IMG/VR virus record: IMGVR_UViG_3300046660_000219
Span: 1 to 64,000 of that record
DNA length: 64,000 nucleotides
Reading direction: 5' to 3' (one strand)
Positions 44,719-62,689 of this stretch are shown piece by piece. The notes beneath the pieces were generated by a model that did no database searches, was not told the DNA's origin, and saw only the letters and a program-made list of their open reading frames with translations. The position numbers and the translations under genes were made by a program. Within the stretch, counting starts at the first letter, position 1. Every line of letters starts with the position of its first letter.

Positions 44719-45084
44719 ATGAGTGTAGCTGTTCTGGTGTCTTCGGACCTAACTAATGCGGGTGGCGCGTTGGTCACTGATACCTTTTCTACTGTCACCG
44801 GTACGACGTATACAGTGCAGTCTACTGACGCCGGCAAGATCTTGCGCTTCACTTCGGCGACGGCTGTAACGGTAACTTTACCAGCATTGACTGCGGGCTT
44901 CAATTGTCTGTGGCGTCAAGTTGGTGCTGGTAAGATTAGTTTCGTCGTAGCTGTGACTGATCCTGTGCAAACCTTGCGCAACACGGACGCTTTTTCAAAG
45001 TCGTCTGGCCAGTACGCCGAGGGCAGTCTGTCCGTGGATCTGGTCACGACTGATTGGTACCTGTCAGGTTCGTGCGGCGCGTAG
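44719..45084 (+). CDS. Small fibre-type beta protein carrying the AVLxxxDLxxAGG tag
   Basis: MSVAVLVSSDLTNAGG; TYTVQSTDAGKILRFT...QVGAG. Confidence 0.7.
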   Translation: MSVAVLVSSDLTNAGGALVTDTFSTVTGTTYTVQSTDAGKILRFTSATAVTVTLPALTAGFNCLWRQVGAGKISFVVAVTDPVQTLRNTDAFSKSSGQYAEGSLSVDLVTTDWYLSGSCGA

Positions 45085-45103
45085 CTGTTATTAGGAAACA
45101 GTA

Positions 45104-45232
45104 ATGAGCAAGCTCGCTAGACGAACGGTGCTTAAGCGTGGTGTACCTGCAAACGCACTGTATAATCGTAGCGGTTCGTTGGTGCTGACCAACAAGACCG
45201 GCTCTCTAATCCTGACCAAAAAGGTAAGCTAA
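45104..45232 (+). CDS. 42-aa MSKLxRR peptide
   Basis: Hand translation MSKLARRTVLKRGVPANALYNRSGSLVLTNKTGSLILTKKVS; AGGA RBS; paralogue at 52124. Confidence 0.75.
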   Translation: MSKLARRTVLKRGVPANALYNRSGSLVLTNKTGSLILTKKVS

Positions 45233-45233
45233 C

Positions 45234-46898
45234 ATGGCGAACGCCCGTGGCTATTTGGCCGACTACATTAACGGCCTGACCGGTGACGAGCGTATCGAGG
45301 TTGGCAATGCGCTAGCTGCGATTATCTCCTACGATCCGGCGGCACTGGACCTCTATACCCGCTTCACTTCTGCACCCAATGAGGCGTACAAGCGTGCAAT
45401 CTCAAACCGTATCCGCCTGCTGAAAGAGGCGAGCATTTGGCCCACCATTGACGTCACCTACGCTCTTGCGGCTGCTGATAGCCAAGCAGCGGCGCGTAAC
45501 TGGGTAGCGGACACGAAAAACCTAACGGCTACTGGCTCACCTACCTTTACGGCCAACAAAGGCTTCACGGGTAATGGCACGAGCGCATACCTCGATACCG
45601 GCGTCAATCCTGGTGCTGGCGGCACGAAGGCTACGCAAAATTCAGCGTGCATAAGCTTCTGGTGTTTGTCGCTGCGTAACCCGGACGCTAGTATTACTGT
45701 TGGTGCACGTAACGCCGGCGCAACCTCGTTCATGGACATGAACCCGCGCTTGACGGGCGAGCTGATCCTAGGTCGCCTGAACAACGCTGGCGGTGGTTTA
45801 TTCAACAACACCGTCACGCTAGGCCATTTTACCATTAATCGTCCAAACTCAACGACGATTGAAATCTATCGCGACGGCCAATTGATCGGCTCTAGTACCG
45901 TAGCGTCAACCACGCCGCCTAACGCTAATCTGTTGATCCTGGCGCGACAAGTTGCCGGTGGCGCAGCAGAGTCTTTCTCGTCTGATCAGATCGCTATGGT
46001 TACAATTGGTTCGGCTCTGACCTCGCAACAGGTTGCCGCTCTCTACAAGGCCGATTGCGCCTACCTTGACGCTATTGCAGGTTCTAGCGACCTCATCGCG
46101 GCGTTTGGTGATAGCCTTACGGCTACCGGATCGAGCACCTATCTGGCTACGGCCGGTGGCTTGTTCAGTCCGACGCGTTCACCTGCTAACAATGGTATCG
46201 GTGGGCAGACCAGTACGCAGGTTGCCGCACGTCAAGGTGGTCTACCGGTAAAGCTAACGGTAACTAGCAATCAAATTCCGGCGTCGGGCACTGTTGCAGT
46301 GACAGCTAAGTCCATCGGTGACTACGGCGTCGACGATGGCCCAATCACGGTGAACGGCGCACAAAGTCTGGCTGGTACTTTGGCTGGTATTCCCGGTACG
46401 TTGGCGCGTGATGGTGCTGGCGCGTACACTTTCACGCGTACGGCTTCCGGCTCTATCACCGCATGTCCGCCGAACTCAGTCTTTACTGTCAGTCTTGCGA
46501 TTAACAGTAAGCAGATGACGCAGTGGCTTTGGGTTGGTACGAACTTCACGAGCCGTGCTTCTACCTTGGCTGATGCTGCCGCGATGATTGCGTTCCTGGG
46601 TCATAGTCGCTACCTTATCGTTGGTCCGTTGACCAAGACGACGGACAGTCCTTCCGTGGTCGCGGAAAAGGTTCAAACCAACACGGATCTAGCCGCCTTG
46701 TATGGCTCGAAATTCCGCAACATGTTGTCCATCCTGCAAGCCAGTAACGATGGTTCGGCGAACGACCTTGCGGACGTCGCCGCCGGCTATACGCCGCGTT
46801 CGCTTCGTGTGGATGAAGTTCACCTTACCACTACTGCTAATAACACTATCGTTGCCCCTACGATGTACAACGCGCATCTGGCCAACGGTTATGCTTAA
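45234..46898 (+). CDS. LamG/ConA-like lectin plus SGNH hydrolase, putative virion appendage protein
   Basis: FTGNGTSAYLDTG; GDSL, GIGGQ, GTN, DEVH. Confidence 0.75.
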   Translation: MANARGYLADYINGLTGDERIEVGNALAAIISYDPAALDLYTRFTSAPNEAYKRAISNRIRLLKEASIWPTIDVTYALAAADSQAAARNWVADTKNLTATGSPTFTANKGFTGNGTSAYLDTGVNPGAGGTKATQNSACISFWCLSLRNPDASITVGARNAGATSFMDMNPRLTGELILGRLNNAGGGLFNNTVTLGHFTINRPNSTTIEIYRDGQLIGSSTVASTTPPNANLLILARQVAGGAAESFSSDQIAMVTIGSALTSQQVAALYKADCAYLDAIAGSSDLIAAFGDSLTATGSSTYLATAGGLFSPTRSPANNGIGGQTSTQVAARQGGLPVKLTVTSNQIPASGTVAVTAKSIGDYGVDDGPITVNGAQSLAGTLAGIPGTLARDGAGAYTFTRTASGSITACPPNSVFTVSLAINSKQMTQWLWVGTNFTSRASTLADAAAMIAFLGHSRYLIVGPLTKTTDSPSVVAEKVQTNTDLAALYGSKFRNMLSILQASNDGSANDLADVAAGYTPRSLRVDEVHLTTTANNTIVAPTMYNAHLANGYA

Positions 46899-47016
46899 TA
46901 GTAGAATCGAGGTTGCACCAACCTTGGTAATTTAGTGCATGCAAGACGTGGCCCCGTTGCTTCATTGCTTCGGGGCCATTGTCGTATCCAGATTATCATT
47001 TGCGGTGGGACAACAC

Positions 47017-47790
47017 ATGGGGCGTAGGTCCAACTTCAAGCGCCATCCGCGCGACCTGTATAAGACGTGCGACATACGCGCCATCATACCTTTGTTGCCA
47101 CATATCAAACACGTTTCTGTTTACGCGGAAACGTGCGCAGGCGACTCCGATCTGGTGCGCCTGTTGCTACCACATGGCAAGCGACCAATTGCGCAGTACG
47201 ACATCGTTCCACTAAATAGAAGTGTAGAGCGACGGGACGCGTTCTCGCTTACTCGTGCTGATATGCGTGGCTGTGGTACTATTATCACCAATCCGCCGTG
47301 GGATAGGAAGCTGTTACATCCGCTGATAATGCACTTCCTGTCGCTGGGCGTGGACGTGTGGTTGCTGTTTGACGCGGCATGGTGTCAGACTTTGCAATCC
47401 GTGCCGTTTATGCCATACTGTCGCAAGGTGGTAGCAGTCGGTCGGGTCTGTTGGTTTCCCAAGACCAAACAGACCGGCAAAGAAGATGCTAGCTGGTACC
47501 ATTTCTCACCGTACAATGTCGGCGAAGACACCCTGTTCTTTGGCCGTATACCTTCCGACGCCATAAAGGGACAACATGGCTCGCACCTACAGTTTCAAGA
47601 CGAAAGCCGAGGCCGCAAGGTTCAAGCCCACGTACGAGGCGGCCAACAACGCCTTCCACAACGGCGACAGCATAATGCTGGACTCGGACTTCGAAGCCCT
47701 CAAAGAAGCGCTGCTGCCGTGGTATCCGGAAATAGAAAGCCACATCGGCGCAACGCAAAACGCTTCAGCACGCATGGTGCCTCTGCCTAA
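47017..47790 (+). CDS. DNA amino-methyltransferase (NPPW motif)
   Basis: MGRRSNF..RDLYKT, ETCAGDSDL, IITNPPW. Confidence 0.8.
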   Translation: MGRRSNFKRHPRDLYKTCDIRAIIPLLPHIKHVSVYAETCAGDSDLVRLLLPHGKRPIAQYDIVPLNRSVERRDAFSLTRADMRGCGTIITNPPWDRKLLHPLIMHFLSLGVDVWLLFDAAWCQTLQSVPFMPYCRKVVAVGRVCWFPKTKQTGKEDASWYHFSPYNVGEDTLFFGRIPSDAIKGQHGSHLQFQDESRGRKVQAHVRGGQQRLPQRRQHNAGLGLRSPQRSAAAVVSGNRKPHRRNAKRFSTHGASA

Positions 47791-49429: not shown

Positions 49430-49458
49430 CCTAACCTTCGGCTAATTTACTATTGAGC

Positions 49459-49493
49459 AAGCGCGCTGGGTTCACCGCTCAGCGCGCTTTTTT
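49459..49493 (+). terminator. Intrinsic terminator
   Basis: AAGCGCGCTGGG..CTCAGCGCGCTTTTTT. Confidence 0.8.
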
Positions 49494-49581
49494 GTTGTCT
49501 AAATCACAGGCAAAATAGTATAGTGCTTGCTAGTCACGGCCAGACTGAGCCTATACTTAAGCCATCACTATGGGACGAATA

Positions 49582-50136
49582 ATGAGCTACGTAAGAGACA
49601 TAACAGAACGCACCATGCACGAGATAGCTGACCATTTTGGGCCTAAGCCCTTGACGCAAACTGATCTGGCTAACTATTGGAACGCCAGTGCTGTTGCGCC
49701 GCGAAAGGCTATGAAGCTGGACGTTACCGCGCGCCTAGCGCAAACAGGTGAGAAGGTCGTTACTACTATTAACGGTAAGGTGGAGACGGTAAATATCGCC
49801 AAGACTGAAAGCGTCGTAGTACGCAATCAAACAGGCGAAGAGTATATTCTGCCGTACTCTACCTTTAAAGATCAATACAGCGGACCACCAGTTAATGGAA
49901 CCTATCAGGAATACGAAAGCATCGGCTTCCGCTATGTCATGCCGTACGATGGCAACGCTACGCAGCTAGAGGCGTCGTGGGGTGAATTGCAGACGTTAGA
50001 GCCCGGCGACATGCTAGGTTGCCTGACTTCTGGTCCTAACGGTGACATCTACCGTATCGCCTACGACGCCTGGAAAGACGGTTACAGTTTCATCGATGAC
50101 GGAACTACCGACCCGCGCCTTAAGCTTACGGTCTAG
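49582..50136 (+). CDS. PGDYG-like domain protein with E14-x-A16 leader
   Basis: GEEYIL..F...Y, ASWGE, EPGDML, DIYRI. Confidence 0.6.
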   Translation: MSYVRDITERTMHEIADHFGPKPLTQTDLANYWNASAVAPRKAMKLDVTARLAQTGEKVVTTINGKVETVNIAKTESVVVRNQTGEEYILPYSTFKDQYSGPPVNGTYQEYESIGFRYVMPYDGNATQLEASWGELQTLEPGDMLGCLTSGPNGDIYRIAYDAWKDGYSFIDDGTTDPRLKLTV

Positions 50137-50147
50137 GAGCTTTATAG

Positions 50148-50663: not shown

Positions 50664-50674
50664 GGAAACAAGCC

Positions 50675-51202: not shown

Positions 51203-51264
51203 CGATAATACTAGATCAGTATCCGCCTAATTTAAGTACTGAATAGCCCTAAGAGGAATACACC

Positions 51265-52113: not shown

Positions 52114-52123
52114 GAGCACCGTT

Positions 52124-52252
52124 ATGAGCAAACTCACTAGACGCTCTGTTGTGCATGGTAGCAGTGCTACCGTTTTACGCTCCGCTATTAATGGCGCAGT
52201 CCTTGTTTCTGCCATAAATGGTAAATTGTTGACTAGTGCTCGGAGCACCTAA
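52124..52252 (+). CDS. 42-aa MSKLxRR peptide
   Basis: Hand translation MSKLTRRSVVHGSSATVLRSAINGAVLVSAINGKLLTSARST; AGGAG RBS. Confidence 0.75.
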   Translation: MSKLTRRSVVHGSSATVLRSAINGAVLVSAINGKLLTSARST

Positions 52253-52253
52253 C

Positions 52254-53798
52254 ATGACCGTTCTAAACGAACTTGAATTGGCTTCTGCTGGTGGGGCTAC
52301 GGCTGCTAGTGTTCGTCAGCGGGCTATCTTGTCGGCACTACGGTTTACGCCTGGGGTATTGCCGCTGGCGGCTTCCGCTCCTACCGTAACGGTAGCTACT
52401 AACGGCACAGCGACAATCACCAGTACGGTTGACGTGTCAAAGACTACACCTAACACAACGATACCTGTAACGAATGCGAAAATCGCTACTGTTGGTACTC
52501 CGTTGAGAGCTGTGAATTCACAGCTTTTCATGGGTAATAGTATTCAACAAGATGCCGCTAACACCGCGACATCGCGTCGGTCCAATCGACAGCGTTATCG
52601 TTTTTTGTTTGACGGTCCAGTGTTTGAAGCCGCTTTTACCAATCGCCAGGGTCGCGTTTGCATCATGGTCGATGGTGAGATGGTGTTCAATGCTCAAACA
52701 GAGCCGCGTCTCCCTATACAGTTATTGAACGACCAAAATGCGTCATTGGTAAAGGTAGATTTCGGTACTAACACGCCGTCTCTTTACGCGTCCTTCGTTC
52801 AAAACAACGGCGCGCCCGCCGTTGGTGGTAGCGGTTACGTGGTAGGCGAAGTTATTACTATGACAGGTGGGACTTTTACTGCACCTGCAAAAATAAAGGT
52901 AACAGCGATAAATGCCGGTGCCGTGCTCTCGGGGCAGATCGTAGATCCTGGCATTTATTCAGTGTTCCCAAACAATAACGTCGCACAGGGATCAACCACA
53001 GGGTCTGGGACTGGTGCGACGTGGAACCTAGTCTCTAGTGCTAGACATTCGGTACGACGTATGCGCCGTATTGAAATTATAACGTCTGGCGATAACTATC
53101 AGCCATACGTGATAGGTATCAATGTTGGTGCACAAGATTGCGTGCAGCCGTGGCCCGTAGTTGGTCCGCGCATCCTGTTCCTTGGTGACAGTCTTGTCGC
53201 TAATACCTTTTCTGACTGGCCGACTGGTGGTTTTGCGGATCTATCTGGTCAGTTTCTTGGCCTGGATGACATCTGGATTTCTGGTCGCAGCGGCGAAGGG
53301 TATTTGCAGCAAGTTAGTGGCGTCAAGTTGCGTGATCGCCTAATCAACGATGTGTACGCATACACCCCGGACATCATTGTTACCTGCATGGGCTACAATG
53401 ATAAGGCGCAAGATCCTACGGCGCTACAAGCCGAGGTGCAGGCCTGTCATGCTGACCTTCTAACCAATCTGCCCAATGCATTCCATTTCGCGATGAACGC
53501 CCATCGTGATTACTTAACTAGCCTTACTCCTCCAGCTAACGTCACAAATGCTATCGCAGCCGGTATTAATGCGGCCTACGCATCTTATGCTAATCGGGCG
53601 CGATTTATCGACAGTGTAGCCTTGGGTTGGGATGTTGGTGGTAGTGGTACCGTAAAAGCACCGACTGGTGTTGGTACGAGTGATTTCTGGATATCCAGCG
53701 ATACACTGCACATGACGCAGGCTGGCCACGAGCGCCGCGCCTACTTGCTAGCGCAGGCTATCTACTCAGCTTCGCGGTCTATTCTGCTGAACATCTAG
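52254..53798 (+). CDS. SGNH hydrolase with fibre-like insert and variant tag
   Basis: MTVLNELELASAGG; GGSGYVVGE insert; GDSL, GYND, DTLH. Confidence 0.8.
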   Translation: MTVLNELELASAGGATAASVRQRAILSALRFTPGVLPLAASAPTVTVATNGTATITSTVDVSKTTPNTTIPVTNAKIATVGTPLRAVNSQLFMGNSIQQDAANTATSRRSNRQRYRFLFDGPVFEAAFTNRQGRVCIMVDGEMVFNAQTEPRLPIQLLNDQNASLVKVDFGTNTPSLYASFVQNNGAPAVGGSGYVVGEVITMTGGTFTAPAKIKVTAINAGAVLSGQIVDPGIYSVFPNNNVAQGSTTGSGTGATWNLVSSARHSVRRMRRIEIITSGDNYQPYVIGINVGAQDCVQPWPVVGPRILFLGDSLVANTFSDWPTGGFADLSGQFLGLDDIWISGRSGEGYLQQVSGVKLRDRLINDVYAYTPDIIVTCMGYNDKAQDPTALQAEVQACHADLLTNLPNAFHFAMNAHRDYLTSLTPPANVTNAIAAGINAAYASYANRARFIDSVALGWDVGGSGTVKAPTGVGTSDFWISSDTLHMTQAGHERRAYLLAQAIYSASRSILLNI

Positions 53799-53844
53799 TA
53801 GTGTAGATTACCATTACGCTCTAAACAATATAGGAGTTACAGCT

Positions 53845-54642
53845 ATGAGTGCGGAGCGTTTCATTGAGACCGCCGATTGTCATGGTTTCCAAGCCTATTC
53901 GCTGCATGATGTGCTAAACGGTAGAGAAGACGATGCCAAGCGCGCGTTAATCACTGCCGGTATGGAAGTCAGTGACGGTGCTAGCGGTGCAGCTCTGGGT
54001 ATGGGGTGGCTTGAAGCCGCCGCTAGTCACTACAATGTCTCGCGCGATCCGAAAGACTACGTCATTGCACCGGTTAGCATCCTCGTTTCGGGCATGCCTA
54101 ACCGCAATGGTGTAGCATTTCCTTTGCGCGAGCTTGCTGCGTTCGACGTCGAATACAAGCAAATGGCTTACGAGACGTGGACCCGCTCGCCGGTGTTCTA
54201 CGAACACGCCAACGAAGATCACACCAAAGCACTCGGCGTGATCTTCGACACGACGATGCGTCATGCGCCAGAATTCGCTGGAGACGTACTATTTCGTGTC
54301 AATGCGTTGTGTGGTGTTGACCGTACGCGTGCACCAATGCTGGCTAATCGTGTTTTGACAGGTAACCTTAAGACGTGGAGCATGGGTGCTAGCGTTGCGC
54401 AGTATCAGTGCTCGATCTGCGGTCACAAGCCGACCAAGACCAGCCGTCGCTGTGAGCATATGAGCCTGGACAACAGGCAAATGCGTACCTTTGTTGGTGC
54501 ATCCGGTCGCCCCCCTAAGCTCGCTCACTACACGTGCGCGGGCATTCGTGGTTTCGAGACTTCGATGGTTGAGATTCCCGCTTGGGCTTCAGCGCAAAAT
54601 GAGCCTAATCAGCTCATGTCGCTGTACTCCCCCGCCGACTAA
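53845..54642 (+). CDS. Prohead (capsid maturation) protease
   Basis: NRNGVAFP..EL, PVFYEH, GVIFD, WSMG..CSICG, SMVEIPA. Confidence 0.7.
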   Translation: MSAERFIETADCHGFQAYSLHDVLNGREDDAKRALITAGMEVSDGASGAALGMGWLEAAASHYNVSRDPKDYVIAPVSILVSGMPNRNGVAFPLRELAAFDVEYKQMAYETWTRSPVFYEHANEDHTKALGVIFDTTMRHAPEFAGDVLFRVNALCGVDRTRAPMLANRVLTGNLKTWSMGASVAQYQCSICGHKPTKTSRRCEHMSLDNRQMRTFVGASGRPPKLAHYTCAGIRGFETSMVEIPAWASAQNEPNQLMSLYSPAD

Positions 54643-54657
54643 TAAGGAAATAGTAAC

Positions 54658-56040
54658 ATGGCTACTGCCGTTTTGTCGGCTTCTGATCTCGCCACGGCGG
54701 GTGGTTCGATCAATCTTTCGACGCGTTTGCGTCGCCTTGCGGAAAGGGCTGCGCTAAGTAACCCTTTCGATACGCCGCCTTTGGTGGTTCCACCCGACTA
54801 CGCTAACTCTACGGCGCTCCTGCAAGGGCACGTCGTCAAGAGTGGCGGTAACATGTTCATGACGGTGACGGCTGGTACTACTGCATCTAGCGGTACGCCG
54901 TCTACAGCCAATGGTGACGCCAATACTAACGGTACGGCGGCCCTGGCTTTCATGGGACCTATACCGCGCACCGCCGACGATCCTAGCGCACCTACTGTTA
55001 CTTTCGTAACGAGTAACCCGGCGCTCGGCGTTGTCTGGGACCCGGTTGGTAATCCTACTCTTTATCGTGCACTAGGTGCTACGCCGCAAGCCTATCGTAC
55101 GTCTCTCTGGGAGCTGCGTTCTTTCGTCCCGGCTGCTAGTGCGGCTACTGTTTGTCGTAGCGCGGTCATTCAGACGATCGTGGACGATTTCAAGTTCGCT
55201 GTCTCCATCCCGTCGAATTCGCAAAGTGTGCGTATCGCTATTGACGGTCAATTCTACAGTGTGTCGAGCTGGAACCCTGGTGGTTCTGACTCCTGGGCTG
55301 TTTTTGACTACACCGGCAAAGCCGCGAAGAAGCATCGCCTCGTTAGTGTTTACACTAACAAGAGCACTAGCTATTTCGGTGGCGTGCAAACGACCACGGC
55401 TGGACAGATTCACACGCCACCCGTCTCTGACACCATCAGAATGGTAGAATGTGCTGACAGCCTTGGCGCTGGTGCTGGTCCTGGCCCGTGGGGTGCGGGT
55501 AACGCCCCGGCTGTCGCTTTCGGTTCGATGATCGGCGTCGAAGATGTGTGGGTGCTGTCTACCGGCTCGACCGGCGACATCGCTAACGCTACTAACACTG
55601 CGTACAATTACGCAGAGCGCGTTCCGCAGATCATTGCTCTCGCGCCGCATATCATTTGGATACCGACATCGACTAACGATCTCGTGTCCACTACGAGTGC
55701 GGTTACCGCCGCACGTGTCGCTACGCTGCAAGCGTTACGCGCTGGTTTGCCTAACGCAATCATCGTCAATGAAGGTATCTGGCCCGTTCTGAACGGTGGT
55801 AACACCGCTGCTGTGACGGCACTAGAGAACGCTGTAAAAGCGGCTCACGATACCGTTGTTGACGCGCGCATGTTCTGGGTTCCGCGTGCTACTGAAACGC
55901 CGCCGTGGATCACCAGCAACAACCGTGGTTGGAACATCGCGGCCGACGGCATTCACCCGCCTGACGCGGGTTCGTTGTACATCGCCCGTCAGCGTGCGCT
56001 CGCTTGGCGTCGCTACGTCCTACCGTTCTTGCAAGGCTAA
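54658..56040 (+). CDS. Tagged SGNH hydrolase
   Basis: MATAVLSASDLATAGG; ADSL, STND, DGIH. Confidence 0.8.
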   Translation: MATAVLSASDLATAGGSINLSTRLRRLAERAALSNPFDTPPLVVPPDYANSTALLQGHVVKSGGNMFMTVTAGTTASSGTPSTANGDANTNGTAALAFMGPIPRTADDPSAPTVTFVTSNPALGVVWDPVGNPTLYRALGATPQAYRTSLWELRSFVPAASAATVCRSAVIQTIVDDFKFAVSIPSNSQSVRIAIDGQFYSVSSWNPGGSDSWAVFDYTGKAAKKHRLVSVYTNKSTSYFGGVQTTTAGQIHTPPVSDTIRMVECADSLGAGAGPGPWGAGNAPAVAFGSMIGVEDVWVLSTGSTGDIANATNTAYNYAERVPQIIALAPHIIWIPTSTNDLVSTTSAVTAARVATLQALRAGLPNAIIVNEGIWPVLNGGNTAAVTALENAVKAAHDTVVDARMFWVPRATETPPWITSNNRGWNIAADGIHPPDAGSLYIARQRALAWRRYVLPFLQG

Positions 56041-56060
56041 CGCACAAAGGAAATACTATT

Positions 56061-57389
56061 ATGACAACTGCGGTCCTTGCTGCTTCAGATTTAGCCACGG
56101 CTGGTGGTGCGTTAGCTAACGGGTCGCGCTCGTTCACTGGTACGCGCGTCTATACGGGCATGGGTGTAACTGCGTCTACCGCCTATCCTGGCTACACTTG
56201 GCAACAAATGGTAGCTGCGCCTGGACCTTTTGACGCTGTGCGCTTGATTTTCGCCAACACTACCAACGCTGCCGTGACGATTGACGCGGTGTGTTGCGGC
56301 GCTACGTCTAGCATTGCCGCTTATGATAACGTCTCAGGTACGGGTGTCAGCGGTCGTGCGGCACAATGGGTGCTAGGGAAATTTACAGCACCGGGAGCGG
56401 CTAGCACAACGGCTGGTGTAATGCCTGCCAACACCAACGCTGACATTACGGTAGAAGCGCTGGCGGGTGGTGCTACCTTTGCTACCATTCCTTCGCTCTT
56501 CTATTCCGACTGGATGGCTTGTGAGAGTGTAGCGCGCACGGATGGCGGTACAAAGCCGTTGGTTTTGGTGCGCGCTTACATTTCCCAGGCTGGTGCTATT
56601 CCGCTGTTTGGTACGAACTCATCGATCCCGGATTGGGATGACGAGACCAAGATCGGACTGGTTATTCAGAACCGACAGAAGGTGAATGACTTCGTCACCG
56701 TTAACAACGGTAGCTACACTTTTGCCGGCGAATTCCCGAACAATCCCATTCTTGGCGTTGAGTTCGCCATGCGCGTTCCTACTATTACGATGGTAGGCAT
56801 TGGCGATAGTAAGGTGCGCGGTCAGGCCAGCACGCCTGACGGCTACAATTATATGGAGATTTTAGCTAACTCTGTCAGCACTTTGACGGCTCCTGTCATA
56901 CCGGCCATTTACGGATGGGGCGGCCAACAGACGTCGTACAATTTCTCGCGCTGGCAGAAGCTTATTGCGGCTGGTATCAAACCACAAATTGCGATCTTCT
57001 CGCCGTTCTCTCAGAACAACTGGACAGGTACGGCCAGCCAAGTGTCGTCGGCGCAATATGCTACTATTCAATTCGTACGCTCCTGTTGCGAACGCGGTAT
57101 CTTCCCTATCCTCGTGACCGGCGAACCTATTGGTGCGGTTGACGACAGCAGCCCTACTCTACAAGCAGATAATGCTAGAAAGCTGGTGAACACTTTCATC
57201 CGCAATCTTGAGAGCACTTACGTGGGTGTCTTCGACAACGCAACGGTTATGGGTGACGGTGCTACGCCAGAACGGTATAAGCCATCTATGGTTAGCTCTG
57301 ACCACGTGCACCCCAACCTTGTCGGTCATCAAGCTGCCGCTACAGCGGCGTTGCCGAAACTGCAAGCGATCCTCGCGCGTATTCGCTAG
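56061..57389 (+). CDS. Tagged SGNH hydrolase
   Basis: MTTAVLAASDLATAGG; GDSK, SQNN, DHVH. Confidence 0.8.
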   Translation: MTTAVLAASDLATAGGALANGSRSFTGTRVYTGMGVTASTAYPGYTWQQMVAAPGPFDAVRLIFANTTNAAVTIDAVCCGATSSIAAYDNVSGTGVSGRAAQWVLGKFTAPGAASTTAGVMPANTNADITVEALAGGATFATIPSLFYSDWMACESVARTDGGTKPLVLVRAYISQAGAIPLFGTNSSIPDWDDETKIGLVIQNRQKVNDFVTVNNGSYTFAGEFPNNPILGVEFAMRVPTITMVGIGDSKVRGQASTPDGYNYMEILANSVSTLTAPVIPAIYGWGGQQTSYNFSRWQKLIAAGIKPQIAIFSPFSQNNWTGTASQVSSAQYATIQFVRSCCERGIFPILVTGEPIGAVDDSSPTLQADNARKLVNTFIRNLESTYVGVFDNATVMGDGATPERYKPSMVSSDHVHPNLVGHQAAATAALPKLQAILARIR

Positions 57390-57410
57390 CACATTCAAGG
57401 AATAAATAGT

Positions 57411-58571
57411 ATGACCACAGCAGTTCTCGCCGCGACGGATCTATCTAAGGCAGGCGGCGCGCTAAGGCAGTTTCGCGCGGCGTTCTCCAAAACCGGTACG
57501 CTGGGAAATACCGATACTACCGGTATTTCGGATGGTGTGGCCACTTCAGAAACCAGTCGTGATGTCTTCATGTCGCCGCCGTATCAAGTTAGCGACATTC
57601 AACTGTGCTTCAGCAATATCTACATCAACTCATCCGGCGAAGCTGTCACTACTAACGACATAACGGTACAAGCGAACGTCGAGATCGCAGGTGTGTCTTA
57701 TCCGCTGTTCCAGGCCGGTCGCCGTAACATGGTGCTGGAGCCGGGTGCGGTTGACGTACCGTTTGATCCACTAGCCATCGACATTCCCGCTAACACTGCG
57801 ATGTACTATCGGGTCTACGTTAGTGTTTCGTCTGGTGGCGTGTGGCCGCGTGGGCGTTTCGGCCGCCATAATCGCGCAGGCGGTATTACTGCTGGCGCGA
57901 ACTCTACGGCGGCTATTGGTACGCTACCTAACGATCAAGGCCAGTACATTTACGGTCCCAGCCTAGTGCTAGGTCGTACCGTTGGTAACTCGGCTCCTAG
58001 TGTTCTTGTTGTTGGTGATAGCCTCGTGGCTGGGCAAGGTGACACTGGCGACGCTAACGGCGCAGTCGGCTTCGCGGAACGCGCACTGACTGGTGTAGTA
58101 GGTTACACTACCCTTACCAAGTCCGGCTATCTGATGACGTCGCTCACCAACTCGCACACGCGGTCGCTGGCGCGCTGCACGCAGTTCTGCTCATCGGCCA
58201 TCTTGGAGCTTGGCTCTAACGATATTTTCGGCTCGCACGTCAACCTTGCCACCATGCAAAGCCGTGCGGCGGCTGGTGCCGCGCTCCTGAAGAATCGTGG
58301 TCTCAAGGTCTTTATGACTACTATTATGCCACGTTCGAGTGGCGGTGTGTCGGCTAACCCTACCGATAGCGCAACCACGGCGGCGTACAATGATTGGCTG
58401 CGCCTAGGTCAGTCATTCATGGACGGTCTGTTCGACATTGCTGACATCTGTGAGACGACGCGGAATTCGGGTCTGTGGAAGCCGGCGCTGCAACCGGGTG
58501 ATGGCATTCACCCCAACGGTGCTGGTTACGCTACTATTTCTGCGGGCATAATCACCAGTCAATTGGTCTAG
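57411..58571 (+). CDS. Tagged SGNH hydrolase
   Basis: MTTAVLAATDLSKAGG; GDSL, GSND, DGIH. Confidence 0.85.
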   Translation: MTTAVLAATDLSKAGGALRQFRAAFSKTGTLGNTDTTGISDGVATSETSRDVFMSPPYQVSDIQLCFSNIYINSSGEAVTTNDITVQANVEIAGVSYPLFQAGRRNMVLEPGAVDVPFDPLAIDIPANTAMYYRVYVSVSSGGVWPRGRFGRHNRAGGITAGANSTAAIGTLPNDQGQYIYGPSLVLGRTVGNSAPSVLVVGDSLVAGQGDTGDANGAVGFAERALTGVVGYTTLTKSGYLMTSLTNSHTRSLARCTQFCSSAILELGSNDIFGSHVNLATMQSRAAAGAALLKNRGLKVFMTTIMPRSSGGVSANPTDSATTAAYNDWLRLGQSFMDGLFDIADICETTRNSGLWKPALQPGDGIHPNGAGYATISAGIITSQLV

Positions 58572-58594
58572 CCACACATAGAAAAGGTAGGATC

Positions 58595-58936
58595 ATGAAT
58601 GAGCGCCCGGTAATCCGCCGTTTGGCTAGTAAGGACGATCCAGAAGGCGTGACACGTTTTCGTTTCCCTTGTCCCGGCTGTGAGTATGGTCATTGGGTAC
58701 GTGTGAACGCAGCAGATTCTCCCAACTGGACGTGGAATGGCGACTTCGTGCGTCCTACCTTTTCTCCTAGCGTGCATGTCTTTCCTGGCGGCAGCCTGCA
58801 GACTAAAGCCGAAGGTGCGCGAGACGGCACGTGTCACAGTCACGTCATTGATGGCAACATACAGTTTCTTAGCGATTGCTGGCACGACCTCAAGAATCAG
58901 ACTGTGCCGCTACCGCCACTCGACTACGGAGATTGA
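58595..58936 (+). CDS. DUF6527-like Cys/His protein
   Basis: CPGC..H, WTWNGD..PTFSPSV, CHSHV.DG.IQFLSDC.H. Confidence 0.75.
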   Translation: MNERPVIRRLASKDDPEGVTRFRFPCPGCEYGHWVRVNAADSPNWTWNGDFVRPTFSPSVHVFPGGSLQTKAEGARDGTCHSHVIDGNIQFLSDCWHDLKNQTVPLPPLDYGD

Positions 58937-58939
58937 ACC

Positions 58940-59209
58940 ATGGCAGTTAAAGACGGCCGCACGCATAAGAGTAAAGCACATCGCAAAGCTATTTCAGACG
59001 GTCTACGCGCTTACCACGCCAACAAGAAGTTGGGTGCTTACTACAAGCTCGATTCTCCAAGTAAGTGGCGTAAAAACCTAAAGAGTTCTATGGCAAAGCT
59101 AGAGCGTGAGATTAAAAATAATTCCGCTAGAGGGCTGCCAGCAAATAGAGAAAAGGCTATGCTGGCCAGTTATGCCAAGCTGCTGGCTAAAGGCCCTCCT
59201 AGCAATTAA
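58940..59209 (+). CDS. Small basic protein
   Basis: K/R-rich 89 aa. Confidence 0.65.
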   Translation: MAVKDGRTHKSKAHRKAISDGLRAYHANKKLGAYYKLDSPSKWRKNLKSSMAKLEREIKNNSARGLPANREKAMLASYAKLLAKGPPSN

Positions 59210-59227
59210 TAATAGGATTAGCAAATT

Positions 59228-59623
59228 ATGCCTAGCAGCAAGTGGTTCAACAGCCTGTCGCCACAGCGCAGGAAAGCTTACCTTAAACAGCACAAGAAAT
59301 CCAAGTTCCACGGCAAGCCTGTCAGTGGAGCCAAACCGGTGATTGGCGCACGCCCTAGCCTGGGTGGTGCTATCCAACCGTCCACGGCGGTTAAACCCGG
59401 CCAAAAGGCCGCTGTAAAGCCGCCTGGGAGCCACTTACAGGGCGTGAAGCCCGGTGCGCCTAACCCCGAGGCCGAAAAGCCGATCAAGCTTGTCCCCAAG
59501 GCTCCTAGCGATCACGACGGCAAGGCCGCGCCCGCTAGAGACGTCAAGAAACCTGACCCGGCGCGGGTAAAGGGTTTCACCAACAAGGTCGGCGACGCGA
59601 TCCGTCGTGCGCTCAAGTCGTAA
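59228..59623 (+). CDS. Basic protein with WxxxxSP..Y...H..SK motif
   Basis: WFNSLSPQRRKAYLKQHKKSK. Confidence 0.7.
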   Translation: MPSSKWFNSLSPQRRKAYLKQHKKSKFHGKPVSGAKPVIGARPSLGGAIQPSTAVKPGQKAAVKPPGSHLQGVKPGAPNPEAEKPIKLVPKAPSDHDGKAAPARDVKKPDPARVKGFTNKVGDAIRRALKS

Positions 59624-59635
59624 GGAAATAGTAAC

Positions 59636-60880
59636 ATGGTAACTGCGGTCCTTGCTTCTACGGACATTGCTACGGCTGGTGGTTCACTAAAAGAGTATGT
59701 ACCACGTCGCTTGATTCACGTTGGGACGCGCTCTGGTAACAACGGTGTTGGACAATCAAACGGTACGAACCTTCAATTCAATACCGTTACCAACCATTAT
59801 GTGCCGATCGCCGCTCGCGGTTTGCGTTTGATGTACGTTAACTTTCAAGTAGCGCAGGGCGCTGCCGAGGCTGATCAAACGGCTGACATTACCTTGAAAG
59901 TTGGCGCACGTCCCGCTGGTGCGTCGCCCGGTAAAACCCAACCTGACGCGCCGTCAATTGGTACCTGCCGCCGTGTTACTTGGGGCGGTGCTGTGTCCAC
60001 GACACTGTTAGGATCAGTGTCCGCTGTCGTCGGTAGCACCAACGCAATATCGGATCCACTACCTTTTTATCTGCCCGGCAACACTCTGCTATCAGTGCAG
60101 ACGTACGCTACCTTGACGTCTGGTCAGTACTGGCGAGGGCGTGGCGTAATTAGTGGCCCCGGCGAACGTAACGAAGAAGGCGTTACCGTTACCGATCGCT
60201 CGATTTCTGGTGGTGCGGCTGGTACGGCTGCGTGGTCCATCGGGCCTAACCTTATTTTAGGTATCCCTGATAACCCTAATGCTAGATCTGTGGCCATTAT
60301 CGGTGACAGTATCGCTACCGATACCGGAGACACGGCCGATACTTCGACTGGTATTGTTGGTTACGTTGAGCGCGGGCTAGGTATTTCTGTACCTAACGCC
60401 AAATTCACGCGTGGTGGTACTAAACTCGCGCACTGGACCACGCGTAGCTATTCGCAAATGGATCTAATCGCGGCGTACTTCACCGATGCTATTATCGAAC
60501 TTGGCATTAACGACGTTGGCACGCCGTCTAGTCTTTCGACCATGCAGGCAGATGTTGGTGCGATCATCAACAAACTCCGAGCCCAAGGTCTGCGTATCTA
60601 TCTTGCTACGCTGACGCCGTGGACTACGTCCACTGACAGTTGGGTTACGACTACCAATCAAACGGTAACAGCTAACGAAGCTCTACGTGTTGCGTACAAC
60701 ACGTGGGTCCGCACTATGCCTTTGGGGATTGCTGGCGTGATCGAGGCGGCGGACATCGCTGAAACCGCCCGCAATTCTGGCATCTGGAAAGCAAATAGTA
60801 CGGCAGACGGTGTTCACCCTAACGCCGCTATGCACTTGCTGTTGTCCGCGTCTGTTACTCCTGCCATGTTTGGCTACTAA
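59636..60880 (+). CDS. Tagged SGNH hydrolase
   Basis: MVTAVLASTDIATAGG; GDSI, GIND, DGVH. Confidence 0.85.
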   Translation: MVTAVLASTDIATAGGSLKEYVPRRLIHVGTRSGNNGVGQSNGTNLQFNTVTNHYVPIAARGLRLMYVNFQVAQGAAEADQTADITLKVGARPAGASPGKTQPDAPSIGTCRRVTWGGAVSTTLLGSVSAVVGSTNAISDPLPFYLPGNTLLSVQTYATLTSGQYWRGRGVISGPGERNEEGVTVTDRSISGGAAGTAAWSIGPNLILGIPDNPNARSVAIIGDSIATDTGDTADTSTGIVGYVERGLGISVPNAKFTRGGTKLAHWTTRSYSQMDLIAAYFTDAIIELGINDVGTPSSLSTMQADVGAIINKLRAQGLRIYLATLTPWTTSTDSWVTTTNQTVTANEALRVAYNTWVRTMPLGIAGVIEAADIAETARNSGIWKANSTADGVHPNAAMHLLLSASVTPAMFGY

Positions 60881-60881
60881 G

Positions 60882-61112
60882 GTGGCGAAGGTTGTCAGCA
60901 AGAAAGGTAGCACGCAGAAAGATTGGTGGCACAGAATGTCACCGGAAGCGCGTGCTACCTATTTCCACAGCCACCCCAACAGCAAGCTACGCAAGGTGTC
61001 TGGCGTCAAGAAACCACTAGCCATTGGCGAGCTGTTGACCCTGCAAGACAAGCGGTTGCGCAAGCGTCGCGCCAAGTGGCACGACAGTAAAACCCGGCCT
61101 ATCCAGATCTAG
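60882..61112 (+). CDS. Basic protein with WxxxxSP..Y...H..SK motif
   Basis: WWHRMSPEARATYFHSHPNSK; GTG start right after upstream stop. Confidence 0.65.
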   Translation: MAKVVSKKGSTQKDWWHRMSPEARATYFHSHPNSKLRKVSGVKKPLAIGELLTLQDKRLRKRRAKWHDSKTRPIQI

Positions 61113-61124
61113 AAGGTTATGTAA

Positions 61125-61511
61125 ATGGTAGCCTTAGAGAACCCGTTCCGCACAATCCGTCTTAGCGCCAAGCTAATGCGCCGTGAGGGTTACCACTACG
61201 TGCCAACCTATGCACATTGGTGTCCTGGCTGTGAAGAGCTGCATGATTATGCCGTAGATCAACCATTTCGTAACGGCGCGCGTTGGTCGTTTTCTGGACC
61301 TCCGGATAGACCTAGCTTTTCACCTTCCATGAACATCTCGATCGGTGAGCCTGTCGAAGAGCGCTGTCATTATTACCTGACTGTTGGTGTCTTACAATTC
61401 TGTCCCGATAGCACGCATGCTTTAGCCGGACAATCTGTGCCACTTCCCGATATCCCACAACATATTTGGCTACGCGCCGGTATTAACCTTTCTTCGGAGA
61501 CGTCAACATGA
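61125..61511 (+). CDS. DUF6527-like Cys/His protein
   Basis: WCPGCEELH, WSFSG..PSFSPSM, RCHY..G.LQFC.DSTH. Confidence 0.75.
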   Translation: MVALENPFRTIRLSAKLMRREGYHYVPTYAHWCPGCEELHDYAVDQPFRNGARWSFSGPPDRPSFSPSMNISIGEPVEERCHYYLTVGVLQFCPDSTHALAGQSVPLPDIPQHIWLRAGINLSSETST

Positions 61512-62689
61512 CGACCGCTGTACTTAATGCTAATGATCTTGCTACGGCAGGCGGTCCGCGTCGCGTCATGCAAGTTGGTACTCGCTGCCAGATTCTGGGT
61601 ACGCCGGTGGCCTCAAAGAATAGTACCAACACGCTTACCCGTCACATCATTCCCATCGCCGCGCGCAACATTCAACTGGGTTATTGTAACTGGGCCGTCA
61701 CCTCAGTTAATAACACGCAAGGTGGCGAAACTGACGGCCCGGCGCAATACTCTCGAATGTCAGCAGGCTTCCTACCGGACTTTGCTGTAGCTAATGTTAT
61801 AGCCGCGCAATTCAGCGGTAAGACTACTCCGACGTTGGATGTTGGTGGTACTTTTATTTCTGATCCTATCGGTGTGTACATACCGGCCGGAACCGCTATT
61901 GGTGTTCGCAGCTCTATGGCTACGGCCACGGACGTTAACTGGTTCGGTGGTCTGACTACCGTTAGTGGTCTTACGGAGCGCACGGAATACGGTACGGTAG
62001 CCAGCCCGGTGACTGACAAGTCGCTCAGTGGTTCCATCGCTAATGGCCTTGGTGCTAGCTTCACGCCTACTCTTATTCTGGGTGTTCCTGTAAACCCATT
62101 GGCGCGCTCTGTTGCGATCATTGGCGACAGTATTCCCACGGGTACGGGCGACACGGCTGACGCCAGTACTGGCGCTATCGGTTATATCGAACGCGGCCTG
62201 ACCATGGCTGTACCTGCGTCTAAGTTTACTCGCGGTTCCGATCGCTTGAGTTATTGGGCGGTGCGTCGCTATTGCCGCATGTCTTTGATCACGAAGTATT
62301 TTACGGACGTGATCATCGAACTCGGTGTTAACGACTACCAATTGACGTTGTCTACCGCTTCGCAAATGCAGACCAACTTTATGGCTCTGCGTGATGAATT
62401 GCTTAGCGCCGGTATACGTGTTTGGGCGTGTACCGTTACGCCCGTTACCACGGGTACGGCTGGAGCCCAAACGCCAAGCACTTATGTGGCTGTACAGCAA
62501 GCCTATAACACTTGGTTACGCGCTGGTGTGGCTGGTGTAAGCGGGCTTATCGATGCTGCGCTTATAGCTGAAGGCGGTCTCAATACGGGTGTATGGGTGC
62601 AAGCTTATTTCGGTGATGGTACTCACCCTAATCAAGCTGGTTCTATTGCTATGTCGGCTGCACTTAACCCGGCTATGTTTGGATACTAA
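61508..62689 (+). CDS. Tagged SGNH hydrolase
   Basis: MTTAVLNANDLATAGG; GDSI, GVND, DGTH. Confidence 0.85.
   Translation: MTTAVLNANDLATAGGPRRVMQVGTRCQILGTPVASKNSTNTLTRHIIPIAARNIQLGYCNWAVTSVNNTQGGETDGPAQYSRMSAGFLPDFAVANVIAAQFSGKTTPTLDVGGTFISDPIGVYIPAGTAIGVRSSMATATDVNWFGGLTTVSGLTERTEYGTVASPVTDKSLSGSIANGLGASFTPTLILGVPVNPLARSVAIIGDSIPTGTGDTADASTGAIGYIERGLTMAVPASKFTRGSDRLSYWAVRRYCRMSLITKYFTDVIIELGVNDYQLTLSTASQMQTNFMALRDELLSAGIRVWACTVTPVTTGTAGAQTPSTYVAVQQAYNTWLRAGVAGVSGLIDAALIAEGGLNTGVWVQAYFGDGTHPNQAGSIAMSAALNPAMFGY

What the first reader, a model, noticed from the sequence alone, without database searches (positions are those of the whole stretch)
44719..62689. Seven proteins share a 16-aa N-terminal tag (MxxAVLxxxDLAxAGG) on a diversified SGNH esterase arsenal
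Seen: N-termini MSVAVLVSSDLTNAGG (44719), MTVLNELELASAGG (52254, variant), MATAVLSASDLATAGG (54658), MTTAVLAASDLATAGG (56061), MTTAVLAATDLSKAGG (57411), MVTAVLASTDIATAGG (59636), MTTAVLNANDLATAGG (61508). Similarity mostly stops after AGG. Six then carry different beta-rich domains plus an SGNH domain with intact Ser and DxxH; one is a non-enzymatic fibre-like module. The genes lie among head genes (portal, protease, scaffold), not tail genes. Known: phage SGNH domains de-O-acetylate surface polysaccharides. Inference: a plug-in docking peptide that mounts interchangeable deacetylases on a common capsid or fibre site, a cellulosome-like display on the virion.
Basis: partly seen in the sequence, partly recalled or inferred. 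Interest (0 to 1): 0.85.

Follow-up and report, generated by a model that had tools for sequence, protein, structure and literature searches.

The report
Shared docking tag on phage esterases
One uncultured jumbo phage puts the same 16-residue N-terminal peptide on at least eight different proteins, mostly sugar de-acetylating enzymes, most likely as a plug that mounts them on the virus particle; the principle is known from tailspike phages, but it has not been described at this scale or with this kind of cargo.

Summary
Seven genes in the window start with the tag M-x-x-A-V-L-x3-D-[L/I]-x2-A-G-G (6 DNA pattern matches against 0.00 expected, plus one shorter Glu variant). An eighth copy lies elsewhere on the same 206-kb phage contig.

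Six window proteins and the eighth are two-domain carbohydrate acetyl-esterases (beta-sandwich plus SGNH, catalytic Ser and DxxH intact). One is a small knob domain.

The tag is an autonomous module:
- Invariant residues use 2-4 different codons each, so the peptide is under purifying selection.
- AlphaFold leaves residues 1-23 disordered.
- Close homologues (63-95% identical) carry other N-termini.
- One gene pair shares a 69-nt block, 100% identical, that is exactly the RBS plus the 16 tag codons.

A related tag heads a canonical tail-fibre protein and another esterase in two small phages. In other phages the esterase body sits in tail modules or forms the C-terminal half of long fibre-like proteins.

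Best reading: a virion-docking peptide, as in the conserved N-terminal peptides of K1-5, SP6 and KP34 tailspikes. The docking site (tail or capsid) is unresolved. The argument "among head genes, not tail genes" fails. The main rival is a cleavable capsid-targeting leader. This is a new variant of a known kind, of moderate interest.

The parts
44719..45084 (+). Tagged non-enzymatic protein (121 aa): tag at 44719-44766 (MSVAVLVSSDLTNAGG), then a ~100-aa beta-sandwich knob
   Evidence: for the tag. AF2 pLDDT 90.4 with residues 1-22 unstructured. Best PDB match is the Pa223 capsid spike, E = 5e-6, then CBA120 TSP4 N-terminal region and T4 gp9. The domain occurs in 2,110 protein clusters, mostly at the extreme C-terminus. 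PHROG hits include families labelled virion structural and minor tail protein.
45234..46898 (+). Untagged member of the arsenal (554 aa): helical N-terminus, weak ConA/LamG-like domain, SGNH domain (GDSLT at 292, DEVH at 527)
   Evidence: The internal YLATAGG at residues 303-309 lies inside the esterase domain.
52254..53798 (+). Variant-tag esterase (514 aa): MTVLNELELASAGG (core V-L-x3-E-L-x2-A-G-G), a middle region that matches a PHROG family labelled head decoration, and an SGNH domain at 307-494
   Evidence: This variant form occurs nowhere else in IMG/VR.
54658..56040 (+). Tagged esterase (460 aa), tag MATAVLSASDLATAGG, SGNH domain at 267-438 (ADSLG, DGIH)
   Evidence: (Pfam 27 bits, below the gathering score).
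56061..57389 (+). Tagged esterase (442 aa), tag MTTAVLAASDLATAGG, SGNH domain at 247-425 (GDSKV, DHVH)
   Evidence: Phage homologues align only from residue 27-28 onward.
57411..58571 (+). Tagged esterase (386 aa), tag MTTAVLAATDLSKAGG; paralogue of the 59636 and 61508 proteins
   Evidence: (phrog_8480).
59636..60880 (+). Tagged esterase (414 aa), tag MVTAVLASTDIATAGG; beta-sandwich plus SGNH
   Evidence: AF2 pLDDT 88.7 with residues 1-23 below 50. Foldseek matches two-domain carbohydrate acetyl-esterases and the C-terminal halves of 700-880-aa phage proteins. It is 79% identical to P0001 from residue ~22 onward.
59615..59683 (+). RBS+tag cassette: 69 nt (21 nt upstream plus exactly 16 codons), 100% identical to L081:810-878, with flanks 22-25% identical
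61508..62689 (+). Tagged esterase (393 aa), tag MTTAVLNANDLATAGG

Best explanation
The 16-residue peptide M-x-x-A-V-L-x3-D-[L/I]-x2-A-G-G is a self-contained, flexible N-terminal module. A short linker joins it to at least eight different cargo proteins of one ~206-kb jumbo phage: seven two-domain carbohydrate acetyl-esterases (beta-sandwich plus SGNH) and one small knob domain.

Most likely it is a virion-attachment (docking) peptide. It would bind a common acceptor site on a structural protein, so that enzymes which otherwise look like soluble bacterial esterases become particle-borne. There they would strip O-acetyl groups from host surface polysaccharide (LPS, capsule or EPS) during adsorption. 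Because all eight tags are essentially the same, the cargo would compete for equivalent sites and each virion would carry a mixture.

Shown here: the existence, number and selection of the tags; that the tag is separable from the fold; exchange of the N-terminus between homologues; a recent copy of the RBS+tag cassette; the esterase fold and intact catalytic motifs; tail-module or fibre-fusion contexts of homologous bodies; a related tag on a canonical tail-fibre protein.

Inferred: that the tag docks, that the proteins are in the virion, and the substrate. The acceptor is unresolved: a tail-fibre or baseplate adaptor, or the capsid lattice.
For: Peptide-level selection:
- The seven invariant residues use 2-4 codons each. 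Codon pairs are 103 synonymous-different against 51 identical.

The tag is separable from the fold:
- Residues 1-23 of the 59636 protein have pLDDT below 50 in an otherwise confident model (88.7). Residues 1-22 of the 44719 protein are unstructured.
- P0001, P0002 and P0003 (79, 66 and 63% identical) align only from residue ~22 and have other N-termini.
- The L032 esterase and P0091 are 95% identical, but P0091 lacks the tag: the first ~16 residues are replaced.
- A 69-nt block that is exactly the RBS plus 16 codons is identical between two genes whose flanks and bodies are otherwise unrelated.

The cargo looks like external, receptor-modifying protein:
- Foldseek matches acetylxylan, PVA and CE2 esterases.
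- It also matches the C-terminal halves of 700-880-aa phage proteins, including 'tail fiber' and 'minor tail' annotations.
- Homologues lie after tape-measure and minor-tail genes (L004, L075) or are fused to an Mtd_N tail-fibre domain (P0008).

Context of other tag copies:
- A related tag (MAEAVLNTADILAAGG) heads a protein with tail-fibre repeats from residue 17, hitting 11 PHROG families labelled tail fiber protein (L082).
- The eighth tagged gene lies beside a Phage_tail_fib-domain gene and an endolysin.

Precedents:
- 7-11-residue N-terminal peptides dock tailspikes on T4gp10-like adaptors (PMC6872550).
- Residues 2-41 alone anchor the Pa223 capsid spike (bioRxiv 10.1101/2025.06.11.659172).
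- Virion SGNH domains de-O-acetylate O-antigen (PMC9569702).
Against: - There are no virion proteomics or structure, because the phage is uncultured.
- No acceptor was identified. No T4gp10-like domain was found in the ~85 kb of the genome that I could read. The fibre-like neighbours in L081 have no solved relatives.
- No protein apart from the esterase body is shared between the jumbo phage and L032 or L082 that could serve as a common partner.
- The tail-fibre context of L081 rests on a borderline Pfam hit (23.4 bits against a cutoff of 23) and a weak PHROG hit.
- The L032 and L082 tags are short and diverged (31 and 19.5 bits), so homology with the jumbo-phage tag is probable but not proven.
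- The AF2 body resembles monomeric bacterial enzymes, unlike the trimeric tailspikes for which docking peptides are documented.
- Six of the tagged genes flank the prohead protease gene, which also fits a cleavable leader.
Confidence: 0.55

Rival explanations
1. Cleavable capsid-targeting leader, as in the T4 internal proteins. The tag would direct the proteins into the prohead core, the prohead protease would remove it, and the esterases would travel inside the head and be ejected with the DNA.
For: - The T4 internal proteins are a diverse set that share only a conserved N-terminal capsid-targeting sequence (PMC3012670).
- Giant-phage prohead proteases cut after Glu in an A-X-E type motif and can release short N-terminal propeptides of 20-24 residues (PMC10052503).
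- The tag has [A/S]-x-D at positions 8-10, and the variant tag has Glu at that position.
- Six tagged genes flank the protease gene at 53845-54642 in one transcription block.
Against: - P1 would be Asp, not Glu, in 7 of 8 tags, whereas the portal N-terminus of this phage contains ordinary ARE and GAE motifs.
- Conservation continues six residues past the putative cut, up to AGG, and the copied cassette ends at codon 16, not 10.
- The cargo are polysaccharide esterase folds whose homologues sit in tail modules or fibre fusions.
- A related tag heads a canonical tail-fibre protein.
- The eighth copy lies in a fibre and lysis neighbourhood.
Confidence: 0.15
2. Transient recognition tag. The peptide would be bound by a phage chaperone or assembly or localisation factor during folding or sorting, and would not be the permanent virion anchor.
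For: - The tag is flexible and exposed.
- Small conserved genes of unknown function are interleaved with the tagged genes: two DUF6527 zinc-ribbon paralogues and two basic proteins.
- No acceptor protein was identified.
Against: - There is no evidence for such a factor.
- Known fibre chaperones act on C-terminal regions (general knowledge).
- The N-terminal position on a tail-fibre protein in L082 corresponds to the virion-proximal end.
Confidence: 0.1
3. Double-glycine-type export leader. The tag would be recognised and cut after G-[G/A] by a C39-peptidase ABC transporter, so the esterases would be secreted from the infected cell.
For: - The published consensus is M(R/K)ELX3E(I/L)X2(I/V)XG(G/A) (PMC3140520).
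- The tags share L-x3-[D/E]-[L/I] and a terminal G-G-[A/S].
- The 52254 N-terminus matches in register at M1, L4, E8, L9, G14 and A15.
Against: - No curated leader model matches the tags.
- No C39 peptidase domain was found in any of the window genes scanned against Pfam.
- The conserved basic and acidic residues at positions 2-3 and the hydrophobic residue at -4 are absent.
- The cargo are 40-55-kDa folded enzymes.
- One tag is followed by Pro.
- A related tag sits on a tail-fibre protein.
Confidence: 0.05
4. Nucleic-acid-level element. The conserved 5' end would be a shared translation-initiation or recombination cassette, with no function for the encoded peptide.
For: - Five tagged genes in the window, and the eighth gene on L081, share the upstream AAGGAA(A)TA-type ribosome-binding sequence.
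- One pair shares a 69-nt identical block that includes the RBS.
Against: - Apart from that pair, synonymous sites are scrambled while seven residues stay invariant.
- Upstream identity (0.54) is lower than tag identity (0.66).
- The 61508, 52254, L032 and L082 genes have different upstream sequences but keep the peptide motif.
Confidence: 0.05

Closest known systems
Conserved N-terminal docking peptides of secondary receptor-binding proteins (K1-5/K1E/SP6 hepta- and undecapeptides; KP34 MALxxLV; KP32, Menlow and PhiK64-1 groups) - PMC6872550
   Same: A short, lineage-specific peptide at the extreme N-terminus of an enzymatic receptor-binding protein. The peptide is conserved while the downstream part is exchanged horizontally. 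It is proposed to plug into an adaptor on the virion.
   Different: - Here one peptide is shared by eight cargo proteins in a single genome; the known systems have one or two per docking site.
- The cargo are compact beta-sandwich plus SGNH esterases that look monomeric, not trimeric beta-helix tailspikes.
- No T4gp10-like acceptor has been found.
- The host phage is a PaBG/RHEph12-related jumbo myovirus.
G7C gp63.1 / gp66 and Possum gp66 (SGNH deacetylase tail fibres) - PMC9569702
   Same: A virion-borne SGNH esterase that de-O-acetylates host O-polysaccharide and is attached through its N-terminus to another fibre or adaptor protein.
   Different: Those proteins have sizeable N-terminal attachment domains and are trimeric fibres, with a single esterase per phage.
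Multi-depolymerase jumbo phages (PhiK64-1, RaK2) - PMC6872550
   Same: A jumbo phage that carries a large arsenal of surface-polysaccharide enzymes, some with conserved N-terminal peptides.
   Different: Their receptor-binding proteins use different N-termini to build a defined branched structure and are depolymerases. Here the tags are interchangeable and the enzymes are esterases.
T4 internal-protein capsid targeting sequence - PMC3012670
   Same: A roughly 10-residue N-terminal leader that is the only feature shared by a hyper-diverse set of proteins in one phage.
   Different: The T4 leader ends in a Glu cleavage motif and loads small proteins inside the head. Here the acidic residue is Asp, conservation extends beyond it, and the cargo are extracellular-type carbohydrate esterases.
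Pa223 capsid spike gp52 - bioRxiv 10.1101/2025.06.11.659172
   Same: A short extended N-terminal segment alone anchors an RBP-like protein to the capsid. The model of the 44719 protein matches chain 9ny6_C (Foldseek E = 5e-6), probably in the C-terminal knob, judging by the sizes of the aligned region and of the knob.
   Different: The Pa223 anchor is 40 residues long and unrelated in sequence, it is followed by a triple beta-helix, and there is one spike type per phage.
Cellulosome dockerin-cohesin display (analogy only, from general knowledge)
   Same: Many different carbohydrate-active enzymes carry one common docking module.
   Different: Dockerins are ~70-residue folded calcium-binding domains on a bacterial scaffoldin. 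There is no homology, and no scaffold has been identified here.

Membership tests
N-terminal docking peptide of phage receptor-binding proteins (anchor-branch systems) | Short conserved peptide at the extreme N-terminus of a protein with an enzymatic or receptor-binding body | tested here: met
   Eight proteins start with the tag. The bodies are SGNH esterases or a knob domain.
N-terminal docking peptide of phage receptor-binding proteins (anchor-branch systems) | Peptide retained while the downstream part is exchanged, and the converse: the same body with other N-termini in other phages | tested here: met
N-terminal docking peptide of phage receptor-binding proteins (anchor-branch systems) | A partner protein with a docking domain (T4gp10-like) encoded by the same phage | tested here: inconclusive
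   None was found by Pfam, PHROG or PDB searches of the genes I could read.
N-terminal docking peptide of phage receptor-binding proteins (anchor-branch systems) | The proteins are physically part of the virion, attached through the peptide | not testable with these tools
   The phage is an uncultured metagenomic contig.
T4-type capsid targeting sequence | Common N-terminal leader on otherwise unrelated proteins of one phage | tested here: met
T4-type capsid targeting sequence | Leader ends at a prohead-protease site (L/I-x-E, or A-x-E in giant phages), and conservation stops there | tested here: not met
   Asp, not Glu, in 7 of 8 tags. Conservation, and the copied cassette, run to residue 16. 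Motif taken from PMC10052503.
T4-type capsid targeting sequence | Cleavage and packaging inside the head | not testable with these tools
   Needs proteomics of virions.
SGNH/GDSL hydrolase (cargo) | Family profile match, block I Ser, block V DxxH, and the alpha/beta/alpha fold | tested here: met
   Pfam PF13472 in six window proteins (four above the gathering score) and in the L081 protein. Motifs intact. Foldseek matches to SGNH carbohydrate esterases at E = 1e-20.
Double-glycine leader / C39-transporter substrate | Leader matching M(R/K)ELX3E(I/L)X2(I/V)XG(G/A), with a cognate C39-peptidase transporter | tested here: inconclusive
   Partial match in register. No leader model hit. No C39 domain in the window genes scanned against Pfam. 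The host is unknown.
Pa223-type capsid spike | N-terminal attachment segment, triple beta-helix and TNF-like knob, bound at capsid 3-folds | tested here: not met
   There is a Foldseek match to the spike chain, probably to its knob. The 121-aa protein has no room for a beta-helix, and its N-terminal segment is unrelated. Capsid binding is not testable here.

The most novel reading that the evidence does not exclude
The tag is a universal, monomer-compatible plug that loads a stochastic mixture of eight or more different enzymes onto a high-copy lattice of the virion (capsid or tail sheath). Every particle would then be a multi-enzyme display surface, a cellulosome-like decoration system kept uniform by gene conversion of the RBS+tag cassette. 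That would be a mode of virion decoration not described so far, and a ready-made display handle.
Probability: 0.2. Interest if true: 0.8.

Novelty: new variant of a known kind. Interest (0 to 1): 0.55.

Why it matters
If the tag is a docking peptide, a 16-residue sequence would be enough to mount very different proteins on a jumbo phage particle.

- It would explain how such phages assemble broad arsenals of enzymes against surface polysaccharides and exchange them quickly, by swapping the cargo behind a constant plug or by copying the plug onto a new gene.
- It would extend the anchor-branch principle from two-tailspike podoviruses to a many-to-one system with compact, probably monomeric enzymes.
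- It would give phage engineers a minimal display tag.
- It also gives a simple rule for annotation: recurrent N-terminal peptides within one phage genome mark proteins likely to be attached to the virion.

Tried and rejected
- **Near-identical DNA in known phages:** none. The portal is only ~31% identical to RHEph12, PaBG and Yoloswag.
- **Close relatives in IMG/VR via the protease:** only the source contig itself.
- **Tag pattern in metagenomes:** 63 single hits. All are chance or internal matches except L032.
- **Tag-directed search of 5.8 billion proteins (residues 1-40):** only the query itself.
- **Variant-tag pattern in IMG/VR:** chance hits only.
- **Other recurrent N-terminal motifs among homologues (MAYMKD..., MGILD..., MDPVTLG...):** not shared by several genes within a locus, so they are ordinary orthologues.
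- **Shared partner protein among the tag-bearing phages:** none.
- **PDB sequence searches of the L081 fibre-like neighbours:** nothing.
- **Mtd_N-like N-terminus of the 1021-aa L081 protein:** not significant, E = 0.13.
- **tblastn of the 44719 protein against phages:** no match.
- **PaBG paper:** no information on proteases or fibres.
- **Promoter scan:** no more sites than in shuffled sequence.
- **Sec, lipoprotein or SAR signal:** rejected by inspection. The tag has no basic n-region and no Cys, has an invariant Asp in a 16-residue stretch, and is followed by charged linkers.
- **Recent DNA repeat as the sole explanation:** rejected because of codon scrambling.

Full report
**Source and setting.** The window is the first 64 kb of IMG/VR contig IMGVR_UViG_3300046660_000219 (205,908 bp). 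It has no near-identical DNA among 50,697 phage records. The portal (42588-44417) is about 31% identical to those of the jumbo phages Rhizobium RHEph12, Pseudomonas PaBG, Erwinia Yoloswag and Ralstonia RSL1. A head maturation protease is encoded at 53845-54642. The contig continues beyond the window with an ATPase-like gene, a virion structural protein, the major head protein (contig 65652-66731) and the tail sheath (68497-70731). This order matches PaBG gp082-080.

**Observation.**
- The degenerate DNA pattern for the core occurs six times in the window against 0.00 expected.
- A six-frame PSSM scan separates the six canonical tags (46-56 bits) from everything else. The next best hit, at 26.7 bits, is an internal YLATAGG inside the esterase domain of the untagged 45234 protein.
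- The 52254 tag is two residues shorter and has Glu for Asp, but it keeps the core V-L-x3-[D/E]-[L/I]-x2-A-G-G.
- Six tagged proteins carry a C-terminal GDSL/SGNH domain, four above and two below Pfam's gathering score. All have block I Ser and block V DxxH intact.
- The 45234-46898 protein is a further SGNH protein without the tag.
- The tag averages 70% pairwise identity while the bodies are 20-43% identical or not detectably similar. The proteins from 57411, 59636 and 61508 are real paralogues.

**An eighth copy.** A slightly looser pattern scan of IMG/VR found another tagged gene on the same contig, outside the window (L081:831-2066, 411 aa, SGNH at Pfam E = 7e-14). Its neighbours are:
- a protein matching a PHROG family labelled Hoc-like head decoration;
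- two paralogous fibre-like proteins, one with a borderline Phage_tail_fib N-terminal hit and one with a weak tail-fibre PHROG hit;
- a 1021-aa protein of unknown function;
- a GH46 endolysin.

**The tag is under selection as a peptide.** The seven invariant residues (A4, V5, L6, D10, A14, G15, G16) are each encoded by 2-4 different codons. Across gene pairs there are 103 synonymous codon differences against 51 identical codons. There is one exception. The 59636 gene and the L081 gene share a 69-nt block that is 100% identical: 21 nt upstream including the ribosome-binding site, plus exactly the 16 tag codons. The flanks are 22-25% identical and the bodies are unrelated. So the RBS+tag unit has recently been copied between genes, and its 3' boundary defines the tag as 16 codons.

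**The tag is not part of the fold.**
- AlphaFold2 with a 35-sequence alignment models the 59636 protein confidently (pLDDT 88.7, pTM 0.88). Residues 1-23 score below 50, with only a short helix at 8-13.
- The 44719 protein (pLDDT 90.4) has no secondary structure before residue 23.
- Homologues 79, 66 and 63% identical to the 59636 protein align only from residue ~22 and have other N-termini.
- Phage relatives of the 56061 protein align from residue 27-28.

**What the cargo is.**
- The 59636 body matches two-domain carbohydrate acetyl-esterases: PbeAcXE (7toh), polyvinyl-alcohol esterase (9kr0) and CE2 (2waa), at E down to 1e-20.
- Among viral models it matches the C-terminal half of 700-880-aa proteins of Sinorhizobium, Rhizobium, Xanthomonas and Pseudomonas phages, plus Gordonia minor tail proteins. 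Some are annotated as tail fibre.
- The 79% homologue P0001 lies after a tape-measure gene and before a lysozyme gene (L004).
- Other homologues follow tape-measure and minor tail genes, sit directly after an Mtd_N tail-fibre protein (L075), or are fused to Mtd_N (P0008).
- The 44719 body belongs to a domain found in 2,110 protein clusters, nearly always at the extreme C-terminus of proteins of 100-1500 residues. None of the other listed proteins has the tag.
- Its best structural match is the Pa223 capsid spike chain 9ny6_C (E = 5e-6), followed by the N-terminal region of CBA120 TSP4 and T4 gp9. Foldseek gave no aligned range. The size of the match (103 columns) fits the spike's ~93-residue C-terminal knob.

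**The tag outside this phage.** It is essentially private.
- IMG/VR holds it only on this contig, apart from L082.
- A search of 5.8 billion proteins directed at residues 1-40 returns only the query.
- Of 63 metagenome pattern hits, one is genuine. L032 encodes MVDAVLNSADIAAAGG followed directly by an SGNH domain, in a small phage contig with RusA and lysis-type genes.
- A protein 95% identical to it lacks the tag: the first ~16 residues are replaced.
- L082, a 21-kb viral contig, encodes MAEAVLNTADILAAGG followed from residue 17 by canonical tail-fibre repeats (11 PHROG families labelled tail fiber protein) and a SPRY-like end. The gene lies just downstream of the capsid gene.
- L032 and L082 also share the C-terminal motif of the upstream gene and a stop/start overlap. 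They therefore form one lineage with the same junction and different cargo.

**Interpretation.** These features fit a virion-proximal attachment peptide on exchangeable distal modules. That principle is documented for K1-5, K1E and SP6 (7- and 11-residue peptides), for KP34-type phages (MALxxLV) and for other Klebsiella phage groups (PMC6872550). SGNH tail fibres that de-O-acetylate O-antigen are documented for G7C and Possum (PMC9569702). Three things differ here. The use is many-to-one, with eight cargo proteins on one tag. The cargo are compact and look like monomeric enzymes. The tags are partly kept uniform by copying of the cassette.

**Where the tag docks.** This is open.
- For a tail site: homologous bodies lie in tail contexts, L082 is a tail-fibre protein, the L081 neighbours are fibre-like, and the documented docking peptides are on tailspikes.
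- For a capsid site: the Pa223 spike is anchored to the capsid by residues 2-41 alone, the 44719 protein matches that spike chain, part of the 52254 protein matches a PHROG family labelled head decoration, and eight competing cargo proteins would suit a high-copy lattice.
- Gene position does not decide it. The block also contains a DNA ligase and a NUDIX gene, relatives scatter their structural genes among replication genes, and the sheath gene starts 5.8 kb after the last tagged gene.

**Rivals.**
- A T4-like capsid-targeting leader cut by the prohead protease (PMC3012670, PMC10052503) is the most serious, because of [A/S]-x-D at positions 8-10 and the adjacency of the protease gene. Against it: the acidic residue is Asp, conservation and the copied cassette run to residue 16, and the cargo and the L082 fibre point to the outside of the particle.
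- A double-glycine export leader matches part of the published consensus. It lacks curated-model support, no C39 peptidase domain was found in the window genes scanned against Pfam, and the cargo size is implausible for that route.
- A purely nucleic-acid-level element is contradicted by the codon scrambling.
- A transient chaperone or sorting tag cannot be excluded.

**Verdict.** The docking interpretation is the best supported but unproven. The head-location argument is not supported. This is a new variant of a known kind, of moderate interest.

Noticed in passing
window 46939-47790 (+): A 283-aa ORF overlaps the predicted start of the NAD-dependent ligase gene (47576). It has a 40%-identical homologue in the unrelated small phage contig L082 (12706-13236, minus strand), so it is probably a real gene of unknown function, and the ligase start may lie further downstream.
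   Followed up: partly
window 58595-58936 and 61125-61511 (+): Two DUF6527 zinc-ribbon paralogues (31% identical) are interleaved with the tagged esterase genes. The second overlaps the start of the 61508 gene by 4 nt. Their function is unknown; they could be assembly factors.
   Followed up: partly
window 58940-59209 and 59228-59623 (+): Two small, very basic Lys/Arg-rich proteins with no family match lie between the esterase genes.
   Followed up: no
L004 9702-10349, L074 11224-11985, L075 11313-12095: In three unrelated (pro)phage tail modules the esterase gene is followed by a convergently oriented, smaller SGNH gene whose product has an N-terminal membrane-anchor-like segment. This is a recurrent gene pair of unknown meaning.
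   Followed up: no
L004 8221-9705 (P0001): The 79%-identical homologue of the 59636 protein has a Sec-signal-like N-terminus. It also has a degenerate stretch, AASGLAVAGK, that BLAST aligns with tag residues 7-16, possibly a relic of the tag.
   Followed up: partly
L032 about 10251-10330 (-) and L082 3434-3826 (-): The genes immediately upstream of the tagged genes in the two small phages end in the same motif (...LLSPVTGxxLxxAS) and overlap the tagged gene's ATG. These products are candidate partners of the tag in those phages. No counterpart was found in the jumbo phage sequence available.
   Followed up: partly
window 49459-49489 (+): The only strong intrinsic-terminator-like hairpin in the region (13 bp stem, then a T run) follows the ligase gene. 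It separates that gene from the tightly packed + strand block that contains the protease and six tagged genes.
   Followed up: no
window 35564-41467 and 22761-25967 (+): There are two giant proteins: a 1967-aa helicase-like protein directly upstream of the portal region, and a 1068-aa protein with an N-terminal SprT-like metalloprotease domain.
   Followed up: no
window 46137-46157 (residues 303-309 of the 45234 protein): YLATAGG, identical to the second half of the tag, occurs inside the untagged SGNH protein just after the GDSL block. It is probably coincidental, but it was the only other PSSM hit above 20 bits.
   Followed up: partly
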